Below are positions 9,800 through 60,835 of a stretch of DNA of 64,000 nucleotides, piece by piece. Numbering within the stretch: position 1 is the first letter of the stretch; each line of letters starts with the position of its first letter. The notes under the pieces are model-generated. The model was not told the DNA's origin and ran no database searches. It was given only the letters and a program-made list of their open reading frames with translations. Both the position numbers and the translations under genes were made by a program. Source of the DNA: Octopus bimaculoides (Eukaryota); the NCBI RefSeq assembly GCF_001194135.2, contig NC_069003.1, positions 5,091,723-5,155,722 of the forward strand, read 5' to 3'.

Positions 9800-10004
9800 G
9801 GTCCAGTTCCAAGGCCTGGAATTTGAAGGGAGGGGGATGGTCGATTAGATCGACTGCAGTACTCAACTGGTACTTATTTCATCGATCCCGAAAGGATGAA
9901 ATGCAAAGTCGACCTCGGCGGAATTTGAACTCAGAACGTAGCGACGGGCGAAATGCCGCTAAGCATTTCGCCCGGCGTGTTAACGTGTCTGCCAGCTCCC
10001 CGCC

Positions 10005-40865: not shown

Positions 40866-41752
40866 ATCTGACAAGCGAGAGAGAGAAGAAGAGGGACAGA
40901 GACAAAGAGATAGCAGGAATAGATGAAGTGAGAGAGGAGGGGGTGAGGTGTGAGGTGATGTATGTGTGGTAGGCGACGTGTGAAATATCAACGTTGCGGT
41001 GATGCTATAAGGTGTGATGAGCAAGATAGTCTCTCAAGACAAGCCACTCACACTCTCATTGTCACTCTCGCTCTCACTCTCTCCTGATCTCTCCCTCTTC
41101 CTATTTCTCTCCCTGTCACTTCCTCCTCCTCTTCCTCCTCCTCCTCTTCCTCTCACCCATCATTAATCTCGTCCATTGATCCCGATTAGATCTATCAATG
41201 TCGTCTGGATTTTCTCTCGCTCATCGCTTATGTATGTGTTTACAAATTGGATTGTAGACCAATCCCACAGGAATATAGTTATGTATATACTGATGTGTAT
41301 GTATGTACGTATGTATACACACACACATAAACACACACGCACATATATATATACATATGTGAATGTTTCCATATATATACACACACGCATATATATATAT
41401 ATGTGTGTGTGTGTGTGTATTTGTACATACCTACATATATCAATGTATGTATAAATATATAAATAAATATCTCCGTTTATCAAATCCATATCCGCATATG
41501 CATATATGTATGTATATATACATGTATATATACATAAATACGTGCATGTACATATGCATATATATATATTATGTATATGTATATATATGTATATATATAT
41601 TGTGTATACATATATATATATATATATATATGTATACAAATATGTTTGTCACATATTTCAACTGCTAAAGTTACCGTGGAGCTACACTGCAGTTACCGTG
41701 GAGAAATTCCTCTCTTGTGGTAAGAGGTGTGAAAACACCTAGTTCATTCAGT

Positions 41753-41834
41753 GTTGCCATCTCTCGGGAATCTCAGACATCGATGTTTCGAGTTTATTGA
41801 CTCTTGTCGATGAGATGTACCTAAGAGAGGCAAC
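41753..41834 (-). ncRNA. Extended type I hammerhead ribozyme with variant core (U3-A8, C4)
   Basis: - strand: gttgcc-tctctt-agGTAC-atctca | TCGACAA | gagt-caataa-actc | GAAA | catcgatg-TC(cleave) | tgagat-TCCC-gagaga-t-ggcaac; all three helices pair and the triplet is GUC. Confidence 0.8.
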
Positions 41835-41994
41835 TCTGGACGAACTAAATAAAGATTGTAGCTTTTTCTATAATTCAGTCAACAATATTACTCATTCGTG
41901 TTTTGTGGATCACAGTTATGTCCATAGCTTTTATATTTTTCAGAACGTTTCTTATGGACGTTCTGAACAGTTCCATCTTCTTCAAACTTCCACA

Positions 41995-42027
41995 TAACTT
42001 AGCGGTTCGGTAAAAGAGAATCGATAC

Positions 42028-42063
<36 letters not shown>

Positions 42064-42084
42064 CAGATAGATAGATAGATAGAT

Positions 42085-42160: not shown

Positions 42161-42385
42161 GCAGGGAGTTGTCTATATTGACAATCTACACCTGGATAGT
42201 TAAACTGCAATCTTTTCTGCGGCACTATTCGTGACGCACATGGGGTAATTTTGGGGAGAGATACGGAATTTGCTAGTCGATATAAATTTGGAGTTGCTGA
42301 TTTTACTTATGTGATATTTGATGTTGCATGGTCAAATATACATGGGTTTATTAGCATTTTCAAATTTATAATTTTGAATATGATG

Positions 42386-42431
42386 CTGAAGAGTGAAATG
42401 AATTTTTATAAAATTCTAATCACGAAACGTC
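42386..42431 (+). ncRNA. Hammerhead-like motif with long stem II and broken stem I
   Basis: CTGAAGA-gtga-aat-gaatttt-tat-aaaattc-taa-tcac-GAAA-CGTC. Confidence 0.45.
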
Positions 42432-43863
42432 GTACAGGATTAACTAACGGCAGGTTTGTTCTGTTTATTTTTCCTCTTTTATTCTATGTGAGCCATGAAT
42501 ATCGCTATCCGTTGGAGACTTAATTATAGTTAGAATTAGTAGTTTTAACTGTTATTTCTAAATTTTCAGTATGTTGGTGAAGCAACTTTTGCTGATCCCT
42601 ATATTATGTTTATATATATATATATATATATATGTAGATATGTATATACACAATGTGCATGCATACACACGCATACACACACGCATACACACACTCATAC
42701 ATACATATACAGGCACGCATACATATATGCTTATACATATGCACATGTAGCATTATATATTTATTTGATTTTATGTGCCTTCGTGTGGGTTTATAAGTGT
42801 ATATACAAGTATGTGAAAGTGTGTGTTTCTGTATCAAAGTGCATTTATGTATCCGTGTGCTCATGTATGTGTATGTGTTTGAGTGCTTCCAGTCTGTGTG
42901 TGTACGTATGTTTTATATGCCTGTATATACATGTGTGTGTGTACGTCTGTGTTTGAACAAGGCTGTGCATTGCAAAAGAAAAATGAATGTGTCGAGAGAA
43001 GAGAAAGAAACAAAATGAAGGTAAGAGGGGTTATTTTGGTTTTCCTTTTCTCTTTCTGTTTTTTTTTTCTTTTTCTTTTGATTGGCAAGAATGTAGCAAT
43101 TTGTGTGTGTAATGAAACAGAAGGCTGCAATAACGGAGATGGGCCTGTGTTGACATTGATAAGTTAAGTGACTGTCATCAGGCGATTAACTACGACAACT
43201 TGACAATATTGCTGGACGCCATTACTGAGCAGACGACACTCATTTTCTCTTCCCTCTTCCATTCCTACGCTTACCATTTCTCTATCTCTCTCCCTGTCCT
43301 TCTTCTCTCTTCTTTCTCTATCTCTTTCCCCTTCCTTCTTTCTCTCTTCTCTCAATTCTTTTCTCGTTTAGACATCATTCCGAATGTGTATTTCTTTCCC
43401 CTTGTTATTTATCTTTCCCTTTTGGTTTACTCTTTCTTTCTCCCTACTTTCTCTTTTCTCATACATTCTTACTCTTTATATTTTTCTCCTCTTCTCCTGA
43501 CTCTTTCTCTTGCTGTTCCTTACTCATTCTCCCTTTCATGCTTCTTTCTTTCCCTCTCTATCAACATTCTCTCTTTCTCTATCTCTATCTATCTATCATT
43601 ATTTATTTATTTATTCTTTCTTTCCATCTATCCATCTATCATCTATCTATCTATCATCTATCTATCTATATAACTATCCATCTATCCATCTGTCTATCTA
43701 TCGGTCTAAATATCTATCTATCTATCTATATATATATATTTTTTTATTTTTATGACGTTGACCACTAACGTGGACATTTAATGTGCTAGAAATAGATCAC
43801 ATCTTGTGTCTAAAAAGACCTAAATTGTTCTCAATAATATAATAATAATAATTTAATAATAAT

Positions 43864-54410: not shown

Positions 54411-54617
54411 AAATTTTGGCACAACGCCAGCAAGTTCGGGGTGGGGGGGGGACAAGTCAATTACATTGACCCAAGTCCTCAACTGGTACTTATTTTATCG
54501 ACCCCGAAAGGATGAAAGGCAAAGTCGACCTCGGCGAAATTTGAACTTAGGACATAAAGACGGACGAAATACCGCTAAGCATTTTATCTGGCATGATAAC
54601 GATTCTGCAAGATCCGG
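54411..54617 (-). mobile_element. SINE family A
   Basis: atcgaccccgaaaggatgaaaggcaaagtcgacctcggcgaaatttgaac core. Confidence 0.9.
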
Positions 54618-58189: not shown

Positions 58190-58250
58190 AGAACAACTAC
58201 ATGTATATATATGTTTCGGTGTAACTGGTCTCGTCAGTGTAGTACAGTTC
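58190..58250 (-). ncRNA. Decayed type I hammerhead motif
   Basis: - strand gaac-tgt-actaca-CTGACGAG-accagttacac-CGAAAC-atatatataca-tgtagt-t-gttc; stem I pairs, stem II and the triplet are decayed. Confidence 0.5.
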
Positions 58251-59335: not shown

Positions 59336-60835
59336 TATTAGATTGGTGCAAAATAATTGTTTTTTGTTATTTTAACCTTTGAGGTTTATTTTGGAAGAAA
59401 CGTTCATGTAATATACTATTTTGAATCTCTTTAGATTTCGATCTATTGAATAATACTGATGGTTTTGCTTGCACAGTTAATTCCTGTTTATTTTAGGCTG
59501 TCAAATTAAAAAATAGAAAAAAGCAAATTCGGACGATTTTATTGTCAAGGAACGTACAGCTTCAAAAATTTGTTTTCAGAAATTTCCAGTAAAGCAGACG
59601 ATATCTTTTAAGATGAGGAAGTTTGCGAGTTACCATCTTCTAAGATTTACCACGACCAATGGAGGATCATTACTAAAGCTTACTCACGCAAAATAATTGG
59701 AAGCGTTGCAGGAGAACTAAATGTTGAACAGTTAAATGTTGTTATATATTTGCATTAGACTAGACAGTCAAAAAGGAGTGATAAACGGGTGCTGCACTAG
59801 CTGAATGGAAGTTAGAATTAAAAGATTCATCTCACGAAATCTATTCTGCACTTCATTTGGGCCCCAAAACAAAAAAAAACTATTAATTTCTTGATAGTAT
59901 TGCGACAAGTGAAGTGACGAGAAATTGATCCTATAACAACAGCTGAGAGCAGGACTGGACGACTTGGCGCAGCTGTTCAGGCGTTGGTGATTGGCGCAGC
60001 TGTTCGGGCGTTGGCGCGGCTGACTGGACATTCGCCTCGTTTTGACCACAGAAATTTTTCGGAAGCAACTGCACATATACACACGTGCGCATGCATACGC
60101 ACACGTAGAAATATACACATATAGTTACAGTGAAAAGAGAGAGAGAAAAAGAAAGAGAGAAAGAGACATACAGACAGATAGAAGGAGGGAGATTGAAAGG
60201 GAAAGAGAGTGAGAGACATTACAATTTATTAATTGAACCTGGCCATTTCTTCTTCCTGACAACACCTGAGCGAGTCTTGCAAATGGCGGCACAAACTGAA
60301 AGAACTGAGAGCTCCAAGACTTTTGGGAAAGGGGGCCAGTTGATTAGATCGACTCCAGTACACAACTGGTACTTAATTTATTGACCCCGAAAAGGTGAAA
60401 GGCAAAGCCGACCTCGGCGGAATTTGAACTCAGAACATAAAGACAGACGAAATACTGCTCAGCATTTCGCCCGGCGTGCTAACGATTCTGCCAGCTCGCC
60501 ACCTATACACCAAAACTTTACGCCACTCTGCTGACTCCCCAGACTTCTCTCTGACCAATTACCAATTTTTCGGTCCTTCCAATAACTTCCTGCAAGCAAA
60601 GGTCTTCATCAAACGAGCAGCAGTTCAAACGGTAACAACAACTAATAGTTCCTGGACCTTATGAATTCTAGGCAACCGGGATAGATTTTTTTTCCAACCA
60701 AGGAATAAGTGTAGATTTTAATGGCTATTACAATCAATTAACTACATTGGCATTAATAATCATTTATTATGTATTGATATCGATTTAAAGTTGATATTTA
60801 AAAGCCACTACAACTATTTTGGCACCAACCTGCTA
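59336..60835 (+). mobile_element. Decayed Hsmar1-like (cecropia-type) mariner with both TIRs and nested insertions
   Basis: 5' TA-ttagattggtgcaaaataattg and 3' caactattttggcaccaacctgc-TA; remnants FLDSIAT..DEKLILYNN (~59885-59960), PFLLPDN (~60245) and HSADSPDFSLTNYQFF...NFLQAK (~60520-60600). Confidence 0.85.
60321..60503 (-). mobile_element. SINE family A nested in the mariner
   Basis: Near full-length reverse-complement copy with head and core. Confidence 0.9.

What the first reader, a model, noticed from the sequence alone, without database searches (positions are those of the whole stretch)
41753..41834. Intact extended type I hammerhead ribozyme with a non-canonical U3-C4...A8 core
Seen (- strand): stem I is 6 bp (AUCUCA/UGAGAU), then an internal loop (AGGUAC/UCCC), 6 bp (UCUCUU/GAGAGA, one G-U), a 1-nt bulge and 6 bp (GUUGCC/GGCAAC). 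Stem II is GAGU-CAAUAA-ACUC. GAAA is intact. Stem III is the perfect palindrome ACAUCGAUGU, and the triplet is GUC (cut between + coordinates 41776 and 41775). The core reads UCGACAA instead of CUGANGA. Established: C3-G8 is a tertiary Watson-Crick pair that tolerates a U-A swap, and the Schistosoma Sm-alpha ribozyme has the same geometry (6-bp proximal stem I, GUAC/UCCA loop, 4-bp stem II with CAAAUA loop). U4 is normally conserved. Inference: because every helix and tertiary-loop motif is preserved and the 3-8 change is compensatory, this looks like a functional or tuned (slower) variant rather than random decay. Searches requiring CUGANGA would miss it. It may mark an undescribed cephalopod retrozyme/circRNA family or an exapted intronic ribozyme.
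Basis: partly seen in the sequence, partly recalled or inferred. Interest (0 to 1): 0.9.

Follow-up and report, generated by a model that had tools for sequence, protein, structure and literature searches.

The report
Solo hammerhead-type ribozyme copy, altered core
This is a single copy of the self-cutting "hammerhead" RNA motif that mobile elements scatter through animal genomes; its helices are perfectly kept, but three catalytic-core letters are changed, so it is most likely a weakened or dead relic, not a new kind of ribozyme.

Summary
The - strand 41834..41753 folds on paper into a type I hammerhead: 6-bp proximal stem I, GGUAC/UCC internal loop, 4-bp stem II with a 6-nt loop, GAAA, palindromic stem III, and GUC with C17 at 41776. 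It is not chance. A relaxed descriptor finds only this site in the window and almost nothing in shuffles. A covariance model built from five tested animal hammerheads scores it 36.3 bits (E about 3e-9).

The first core strand reads UCGACAA, not CUGANGA, and no Rfam hammerhead model reports it even at E<=10. Published work already covers both deviations. U3-A8 is a known natural covariation. U4C is a known viroid variant that "considerably decreases" cleavage in vitro. The motif is a single copy in a ~366-nt self-paired segment between microsatellites, in octopus-like DNA. There is no tandem partner, and I could reach no relatives in any collection.

Best reading: a solo retrozyme- or Penelope-type hammerhead copy from a U3-A8 lineage, with one further U4-to-C hit, so slow or inactive. 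A conserved, active U3-C4-A8 family is not excluded (about 10%). Interest is modest.

The parts
41740..41847 (-). Whole hammerhead arm (108 nt): a three-way junction at the tip of a ~28-bp interrupted helix I
   Evidence: Fold -43.2 kcal/mol, z = -6.0, 0 of 200 shuffles as stable. Inverted repeat I1.
41823..41834 (-). Distal and middle stem I, 5' strand (GUUGCC UCUCUU)
   Evidence: Pairs with 41753-41765, with one G-U and one bulged U at 41759.
41817..41822 (-). Stem I internal loop, 5' side: AGGUAC, the tertiary-contact motif
   Evidence: GGUAC is identical to Schistosoma Sm1/N79.
41811..41816 (-). Proximal stem I, 5' strand: AUCUCA (6 bp)
   Evidence: Perfect pairing with 41770-41775.
41804..41810 (-). 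First core strand: UCGACAA in place of CUGANGA (U3, C4, G5, A6, C7, A8, A9)
   Evidence: Read directly. It differs from the consensus at positions 3, 4 and 8, and all three changes are transitions.
41790..41803 (-). Stem-loop II: GAGU-CAAUAA-ACUC, with the G10.1-C11.1 pair
   Evidence: The loop resembles Sm1 CAAAUA.
41787..41789 (-). G12 A13 A14 of the GAAA box
   Evidence: matched by model R1.
41777..41786 (-). Stem III: the palindrome ACAUCGAUGU, running from A15.1 to U16.1
   Evidence: The self-duplex is -12.9 kcal/mol. Tested coral, mussel and axolotl retrozyme hammerheads have the same kind of palindrome.
41776..41776 (-). C17. The predicted cleavage lies 3' of this base, between 41776 and 41775
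   Evidence: Position relative to GUC and stem I. Cleavage itself was not tested.
41770..41775 (-). Proximal stem I, 3' strand: UGAGAU
41753..41769 (-). Internal loop 3' side (UCCC), then GAGAGA, bulged U, GGCAAC (3' strand of middle and distal stem I)
   Evidence: GAUUCC is shared with Sm1.
41655..42020 (-). Putative solo element: a ~366-nt non-repetitive segment between a (TA)n-rich tract and a (GATA)n tract. Its boundaries are inferred.
   Evidence: There is no second copy in the window. Fold -103 kcal/mol, z = -4.4. With the arm removed the rest still gives z = -2.6. The size lies inside the 170-400 nt range of animal retrozymes.

Best explanation
This is a solitary genomic copy of a hammerhead-bearing retroelement RNA of the animal retrozyme / Penelope-like kind. 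It sits between microsatellites in octopus-like DNA.

In active relatives the pathway is known. Multimeric transcripts fold into this type I junction. The stem I bulge (GGUAC/UCC) docks on loop II. The RNA cuts itself after C17, often through a two-copy helix III formed by the palindrome. The monomers are then circularised by a host ligase and copied back into DNA.

This copy most likely descends from a lineage that already carried the known U3-A8 covariation (core UUGACAA). It has one further U4-to-C transition in the uridine turn. It also has no tandem partner with which to build the two-copy helix III. It is therefore expected to cleave slowly or not at all, and to be a young relic rather than a working ribozyme.

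Shown: the architecture, its non-random nature, its resemblance to tested animal hammerheads, its single-copy state, and the core differences. Inferred: the retroelement origin, the order of the mutations, and the loss of activity.
For: Architecture:
- It matches the published definition of canonical animal type I hammerheads: helix I 6 bp, helix II 4 bp with interacting loops, and a short palindromic helix III.
- Model R1, built from five tested hammerheads, gives 36.3 bits, E about 3e-9, over all 57 positions.
- The loop motifs are identical to Sm1.
- Tested coral, mussel and axolotl retrozyme hammerheads have the same palindromic helix III.

Setting:
- The ~366-nt segment is strongly self-paired, as retrozyme RNAs are.
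- It lies between microsatellites, which are preferred targets of Penelope-like elements.
- Solo 'monomer' retrozymes are common and dispersed.
- Cephalopod genomes carry hammerheads: 235 Rfam hits in the giant squid. The window shares repeats with Octopus vulgaris.

Core:
- U3-A8 is a documented natural covariation.
- U4C lowers activity.
- In a full mutant scan of a type III hammerhead, all single and double mutants in the CUGA turn except C3G/G8C had low activity.
- The new UCGA (positions 3-6) is predicted to pair with the UCGA at the centre of stem III, with about 0.75 probability. That fold competes with the active one.
- No Rfam hammerhead model reports it.
Against: - Three of the six constrained bases of one core strand are changed, while about 70 paired bases show at most two G-U pairs, one bulge and one A-A mismatch. 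Under plain neutral decay from CUGANGA I estimate this clustering at roughly P = 0.004. That is my own Poisson estimate, assuming <= 5% divergence.
- The proposed U3-A8 ancestor removes most of that problem, but it is an assumption and has not been observed.
- A natural U4C viroid hammerhead still works well enough in vivo, and strong tertiary contacts can offset core defects. Residual activity therefore cannot be excluded.
- No family consensus, transcription data or cleavage data were available.
Confidence: 0.6

Rival explanations
1. It is a functional, possibly slowed, hammerhead variant. On this reading the U3-C4...A8 core is the conserved core of an undescribed cephalopod ribozyme or retrozyme family, and still supports self-cleavage.
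For: - The helices, G10.1-C11.1, GAAA, A15.1-U16.1, C17 and the Sm1-type docking loops are all perfectly preserved while the core differs.
- The 3-8 change keeps a Watson-Crick pair and is active in other settings.
- A U4C viroid variant is viable in vivo.
- The clustering of changes in the core fits poorly with random decay (my own estimate).
Against: - Only a single copy exists, and no relatives were found.
- There is no tandem partner for the dimeric mode.
- U4C considerably lowers in vitro activity.
- A mutant scan found no rescue in the CUGA turn apart from C3G/G8C.
- No hammerhead combining U3-A8 with C4 appeared in the papers I read.
Confidence: 0.13
2. It is a deliberately disarmed hammerhead. 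On this reading a hammerhead-bearing insert lies in a host transcript, and selection favoured core mutations that stop self-cleavage. The stable arm was kept, either for a non-catalytic role as a structured RNA or simply because too little time has passed for it to decay.
For: - The substitutions are concentrated in the catalytic strand, with the helices intact.
- Retrozymes are depleted from genic regions, which implies that cleavage inside genes is costly.
- The mutant UCGA adds 4 bp to the rod-like fold.
Against: - No gene, exon or transcript could be placed here. No convincing coding ORF turned up: the non-repetitive candidates tested had no Pfam hit, and the window has no tRNA or Rfam hit.
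- There is no evidence of conservation.
Confidence: 0.1
3. It is a chance hairpin with a branched tip that merely resembles a hammerhead.
For: - With three core mismatches allowed, the CUGANGA strand carries little information; about 17% of random 7-mers pass.
- Rfam models do not report it.
- A genome-wide scan tests tens of thousands of windows.
Against: - 0 of 150 shuffled windows give a hit with stem I >= 6 bp.
- R1 scores it 36.3 bits, against 17.8 bits for the next best hit and <= 10.8 for everything else.
- It shares an 8/8 and a 6/6 block with Sm1 exactly at the docking motif.
- It has a further 22 bp of helix I.
Confidence: 0.03

Closest known systems
Schistosoma mansoni Sm-alpha / Sm1 hammerhead (N79 is its engineered form), the archetype of canonical animal type I hammerheads
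   Same: - 6-bp proximal stem I.
- GGUAC / UCC internal loop, with identical flanking AUC/GAU pairs.
- 4-bp stem II closed by G-C.
- 6-nt loop II of the form CAA..A.
- GAAAC and a GUC cleavage triplet.
   Different: - The core is UCGACAA against CUGAUGA.
- Sm-alpha is a SINE-like satellite with pol III promoter boxes. None were found here.
- This is a single copy, not a repeat array.
Non-LTR retrozymes of animals (Cervera and de la Pena 2020), such as those of coral, mussel and axolotl
   Same: - A type I hammerhead with a palindromic helix III.
- A unit of 170-400 nt that is highly self-paired.
- Solo monomers are known.
   Different: - No tandem repeat here.
- The core is not canonical.
- No evidence of circular RNA.
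Penelope-like element hammerheads with the U3-A8 core covariation (Cervera and de la Pena 2014; Perreault et al. 2011)
   Same: - U3-A8 replaces C3-G8.
- Mostly single dispersed motifs.
- Insertion near microsatellites.
- A dimer-prone helix III.
   Different: - Those are 'minimal' motifs with a long helix II, an extra base after A9, and no loop-loop docking.
- This one has the canonical docking architecture, plus C4.
- There is no Penelope ORF next to it.
Natural U4C hammerhead variant of a viroid (Ambros and Flores 1998, as cited by Perreault et al. 2011)
   Same: C in place of the uridine-turn U4 in an otherwise complete natural hammerhead.
   Different: - It is a type III viroid ribozyme with C3-G8 intact.
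- Its activity was measured; here nothing was measured.
- I could not read the primary paper.

Membership tests
Hammerhead ribozyme (consensus definition; Rfam Hammerhead_1 and clan) | Three helices meeting at a junction, with joining strands of 7 nt, 3 nt (GAA) and 1 nt (N17) | tested here: met
Hammerhead ribozyme (consensus definition; Rfam Hammerhead_1 and clan) | Conserved strand C3 U4 G5 A6 N7 G8 A9 | tested here: not met
   It reads U C G A C A A. Positions 3 and 8 covary (a known variant). Position 4 is C.
Hammerhead ribozyme (consensus definition; Rfam Hammerhead_1 and clan) | G12 A13 A14, the A15.1-U16.1 pair, the G10.1-C11.1 pair, and N17 not G | tested here: met
   GAA, then A...U closing stem III; G41803-C41790; C17 at 41776.
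Hammerhead ribozyme (consensus definition; Rfam Hammerhead_1 and clan) | Reaches the Rfam covariance-model gathering score | tested here: not met
   There is no hammerhead hit at gathering, nor at E<=10 in a 401-nt search or a 98-nt search.
Hammerhead ribozyme (consensus definition; Rfam Hammerhead_1 and clan) | Site-specific self-cleavage 3' of N17 | not testable with these tools
   Needs in vitro transcription or RNA end mapping.
Canonical animal type I hammerhead (Sm1-like) | Helix I 6 bp and helix II 4 bp with conserved interacting loops, plus a short helix III with a palindromic loop | tested here: met
   Definition. Sequence. Comparison with Sm1.
Canonical animal type I hammerhead (Sm1-like) | Scores as a member under a covariance model of experimentally tested members | tested here: met
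   R1 was built from Sm1/N79, coral, mussel and two axolotl ribozymes and did not include this sequence. It gives 36.3 bits, E about 3e-9 (rough). Caveat: the alignment was hand-registered with N padding, and its 4-column loop III suits this sequence.
Non-LTR retrozyme | Tandem repeats of 170-400 bp, each with a hammerhead | tested here: not met
   No second copy in 64 kb by blastn with word size 7, by descriptor or by repeat search. At most it is a solo monomer.
Non-LTR retrozyme | Highly self-paired unit RNA, expressed as linear and circular RNA | tested here: inconclusive
   Self-pairing is supported: z = -4.4 for the whole segment and -2.6 without the arm. Expression is not testable here.
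Penelope-like element terminal repeat (pLTR) hammerhead | Lies in the terminal repeat of an element that encodes RT and a GIY-YIG endonuclease | tested here: not met
   There are no ORFs with such domains in or near 41-43 kb. The only endonuclease-like remnant is 12 kb away at 29631-29972 and has no Pfam hit.
Sm-alpha-like SINE | tRNA-type pol III A and B boxes upstream of the ribozyme | tested here: not met
   No tRNA-like gene was found. With <= 2 mismatches there is no A or B box on the ribozyme strand in 41600-42080.

The most novel reading that the evidence does not exclude
Octopus genomes harbour a hammerhead lineage whose catalytic pocket is U3-C4...A8 and which still self-cleaves. The cytosine would replace the uridine of the U-turn, helped by the strong Sm1-type loop docking. 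The accepted CUGANGA consensus, and every search built on it, would then miss a working class of animal ribozymes.
Probability: 0.1. Interest if true: 0.55.

Novelty: new variant of a known kind. Interest (0 to 1): 0.3.

Why it matters
If this copy is a relic, as I think, it matters little. Animal genomes hold thousands of hammerhead copies, and published surveys routinely discard those with mutated cores.

It is still a useful reminder that Rfam and consensus descriptors are blind to near-perfect hammerhead folds with a few core changes. Census figures for genomic ribozymes are therefore lower bounds.

If the U3-C4-A8 core proved to be conserved and active, it would widen the tolerated hammerhead core. 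It would also give a natural test case for whether a cytosine can take the place of the U-turn uridine. That would interest ribozyme specialists but would not change the field.

Tried and rejected
Rfam:
- All-family scans at gathering threshold and at E<=10 on 401 nt and 98 nt gave no hammerhead hit.
- The low-scoring hits were microsatellite-driven miRNA look-alikes, plus a 5.8-bit partial match to a hairpin-ribozyme model. I dismissed these.

Search for other copies:
- blastn of 41655-42015 against the window: none.
- Exact-pattern scans of viral contigs: none.
- Metagenome contigs: one hit, L001. On reading it is a chance 19-mer with no hammerhead context.
- Prokaryotic genome contigs: none.

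Protein route to paralogous copies:
- Exact look-ups of three ORFs overlapping the segment: nothing.
- A homology search with the 84-aa stop-to-stop frame across the motif: nothing.

Organism identification:
- Exact look-ups of three other ORFs: nothing.
- A homology search with the ORF at 29.6 kb alone: nothing.
- The profile search finally pointed to Octopus vulgaris.
- Scanning that 20-kb octopus locus and four short Logan contigs with model R1 found no hammerhead.

Other checks:
- MAFFT alignments of the reference ribozymes were mis-registered. I replaced them with a hand-registered, N-padded alignment.
- Secondary-structure energies do not separate the observed core from a CUGACGA revertant. 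Both place the hammerhead fold about 9 kcal/mol above the minimum.
- The pol III SINE idea is rejected.
- Two further hammerhead-like motifs, at 58.2 kb and 42.4 kb, could not be told apart from chance.
- The primary papers on U4C and on 3-8 swaps are not held.

Full report
**1. What is there**

On the - strand, window 41834..41753 reads GUUGCCUCUCUUAGGUACAUCUCAUCGACAAGAGUCAAUAAACUCGAAACAUCGAUGUCUGAGAUUCCCGAGAGAUGGCAAC.
- An 18-bp interrupted stem I (6+6+6 bp, one G-U, one bulged U), with an AGGUAC/UCCC internal loop.
- The strand UCGACAA.
- Stem-loop II: GAGU-CAAUAA-ACUC.
- GAA.
- The 10-nt palindrome ACAUCGAUGU.
- C17 at 41776.
- The return strand of stem I.

The predicted scissile bond lies between 41776 and 41775. 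Helix I runs on for another 3+7 pairs, so the motif is the tip of a 108-nt arm at 41740-41847.

**2. Is it more than chance?**

Yes.
- The 82-nt piece folds with z = -4.4 and the 108-nt arm with z = -6.0. No shuffle in 200 does as well.
- I wrote a hammerhead descriptor requiring stem I >= 5 bp, stem II >= 4 bp, stem III >= 3 bp, GAAA, N17 not G, and up to three mismatches to CUGANGA. It finds this locus and nothing else on either strand of the window.
- In 150 dinucleotide-preserving shuffles of the window, it fired 5 times with stem I >= 5 bp and never with stem I >= 6 bp.
- With three mismatches allowed, the first core strand carries almost no information. The signal comes from the junction geometry, GAAA, the closing pairs and the helices.

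**3. Does it look like real hammerheads?**

Rfam says no. No hammerhead family is reported at the gathering threshold, nor at E<=10 when only 401 nt or 98 nt are searched. It is also a failed membership test.

I then built my own covariance model (R1) from five experimentally used animal type I hammerheads:
- Schistosoma Sm1 in its N79 form (sequence).
- The coral, the mussel and two axolotl retrozyme ribozymes (sequences).

MAFFT mis-registered these sequences, so I aligned them by hand in register with N padding. The finding was not in the model. Searched over the whole window with filters off, R1 gives 36.3 bits, E about 3e-9 (rough calibration), over all 57 model positions at 41765-41821 (-). 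The next hits are 17.8 and 10.8 bits. The best hit in 25 kb of other DNA, mostly from an Octopus vulgaris chromosome, is 10.5 bits.

Column by column, the sequence shares with Sm1 the 5' block GGUACAUC (8/8) and the 3' block GAUUCC (6/6). These are the stem I bulge that docks on loop II, and loop II itself is CAAUAA against CAAAUA.

The published description of 'canonical' animal hammerheads fits exactly: helix I of 6 bp, helix II of 4 bp with interacting loops, and a short helix III with a palindromic loop. The tested coral, mussel and axolotl ribozymes also have palindromic helix III sequences: ACAGUACUGU, ACGCGCGU, ACACGUGU and ACAUGU. I conclude that it is hammerhead-derived, with about 0.9 confidence.

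**4. The core**

Against CUGANGA the sequence has U3, C4 and A8, all three being transitions. What the literature says:

[quoted passage not shown] Perreault et al. [quoted passage not shown] Cervera and de la Pena 2014 found about 1,300 U3-A8 motifs in Schistosoma Penelope-like elements. This part is therefore known, not new.

(b) U4 is the uridine of the U-turn, and the A6-N7 phosphate contacts it. [quoted passage not shown]

(c) In a complete single and double mutant scan of a type III hammerhead, only C3G/G8C showed rescue in the CUGA region. [quoted passage not shown]

(d) The new UCGA at positions 3-6 is complementary to the UCGA at the centre of the stem III palindrome. In the predicted ensemble this competing pairing has about 0.75 probability, against 0 in a CUGACGA revertant. 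However, nearest-neighbour energies place the hammerhead fold about 9 kcal/mol above the minimum for both sequences, so this argument is weak.

Taken together, the copy is expected to be much slower than a canonical one and may be dead. Residual activity cannot be ruled out.

**5. An oddity, and how I resolve it**

Three of the six constrained bases of one strand differ from the consensus. Meanwhile about 70 paired bases show at most two G-U pairs, one bulge and one A-A mismatch.
- If the copy had drifted neutrally from CUGANGA at <= 5% divergence, about 0.3 hits would be expected in those six bases. Three or more has P of roughly 0.004 (my own Poisson estimate, not a tool result).
- The most economical account is that the source lineage already carried the functional U3-A8 covariation (core UUGACAA), a state known in nature. 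Only U4-to-C is then a later single hit, and one hit is unremarkable (P about 0.26).
- This is an inference. I could not see any relative.
- Two alternatives remain as rivals: selection for a disarmed ribozyme inside a host transcript, or a genuinely functional U3-C4-A8 family.

**6. Surroundings**
- The motif lies in a ~366-nt non-repetitive segment (about 41655-42020), between a (TA)n-rich tract and a (GATA)n tract.
- There is no second copy in the window and no tandem repeat.
- There is no tRNA-like gene and no pol III box on the ribozyme strand.
- There is no credible ORF in or near the segment.
- The segment is strongly self-paired as RNA: -103 kcal/mol, z = -4.4. With the arm removed it still gives z = -2.6, and its two ends pair with each other.
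- Its size and self-pairing fit animal non-LTR retrozymes (170-400 nt, 'highly self-paired').
- Solo monomers of such elements are common and evenly dispersed.
- Penelope-like elements, their proposed parents, prefer microsatellite targets.
- A single copy cannot form the two-copy helix III in cis, and it cannot release a unit-length RNA.

**7. Which organism**

The window is a gap-rich draft scaffold (28 N runs, 8,630 N) full of microsatellites, with no tRNA genes and no Rfam hits.
- A decayed ORF at 29631-29972 belongs to a family whose best named member is a hypothetical protein of Octopus vulgaris.
- The 20-kb O. vulgaris locus around that gene shares several interspersed repeats with the window at 80-88% nucleotide identity.
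An octopus is likely.
- Cephalopod genomes are already known to contain hammerheads: 235 Rfam Hammerhead_1 hits in the giant squid.

**8. What could not be done**

The decisive test is the consensus of related copies, and it was out of reach. None of the DNA collections contains cephalopod genomes. The protein-based routes to paralogous copies found nothing.

**9. Verdict**
It is a real, beautifully preserved hammerhead-type fold of the Sm1 kind, in octopus-like DNA.
- 'Intact' and 'functional' are unproven. Given C4, the lack of a partner copy and the single-copy state, both are more likely wrong than right.
- Each core deviation has a precedent. I did not find their combination in the papers I read, but it rests on one sequence.
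- Interest is modest, at 0.3.

Noticed in passing
window 58191-58248 (- strand): A second hammerhead-like motif with a canonical core: ACUACA-CUGACGA-G...C-GAAAC...UGUAGU. It has a perfect 6-bp stem I, but stem II is reduced to one pair and a (UA)n run sits where stem III should be. Model R1 gives 17.8 bits, E 0.0034. My own descriptor expects 0.15 such sites per shuffled window, and the local fold does not support it. It may be a decayed relic or it may be chance. If real, it shows that CUGACGA cores exist in this genome.
   Followed up: partly
window 42375-42445 (+ strand): A CUGAAGA...CGAAAC pair of boxes enclosing a long stem II (GUGA/UCAC plus a 7-bp inner hairpin). It lies about 540 nt from the finding, on the opposite strand. 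R1 gives 10.8 bits, E 0.64, and 0.12 such sites are expected per shuffled window. Pairs of minimal hammerheads 100-700 bp apart on opposite strands are described for Penelope-like elements. There is no sequence similarity between the two flanks and no fold support.
   Followed up: partly
window 29631-29972 (+ strand): A decayed ORF with a Cys-rich CNCR..CPLD motif followed by a degenerate YIGL..FK.R stretch. It has 31 relatives in the representative library, and intact ones read ...YIGLTE..FK.RY..H..SF.... The best named relative is a hypothetical protein of Octopus vulgaris. There is no Pfam hit. From memory, this looks like the N-terminal GIY-YIG endonuclease of Naiad-type Penelope-like elements, which are reported as old remnants in cephalopods. 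I did not test that identification.
   Followed up: partly
window 17732-18042; also 60338-60502, 9840-10001, 54454-54614, 38404-38565, 17338-17478, 22051-22216: Interspersed repeats shared with an Octopus vulgaris chromosome locus (L002): a ~310-bp element at 87-88% identity and a ~160-bp SINE-like element at 79-86% identity, the latter present several times in the window. These place the window in an octopus-like genome.
   Followed up: partly
window 41669-41681 and 41691-41703: A perfect 13-nt direct repeat, AGTTACCGTGGAG, with 22-nt spacing. It lies in the part of the segment 3' of the hammerhead arm on the - strand. Its meaning is unknown.
   Followed up: no
window 20001-28000: About 8 kb with strong strand asymmetry (GC skew -0.56 then -0.44, AT skew -0.27 then -0.17). 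It is pyrimidine-rich on the + strand and built largely of CT-type and TCTA-type simple repeats.
   Followed up: no
whole window: A draft-quality scaffold with 28 runs of N totalling 8,630 bases, and dense microsatellites of (TA)n, (CA)n, (GATA)n and (CT)n. It has no tRNA gene and no Rfam family at gathering score.
   Followed up: yes
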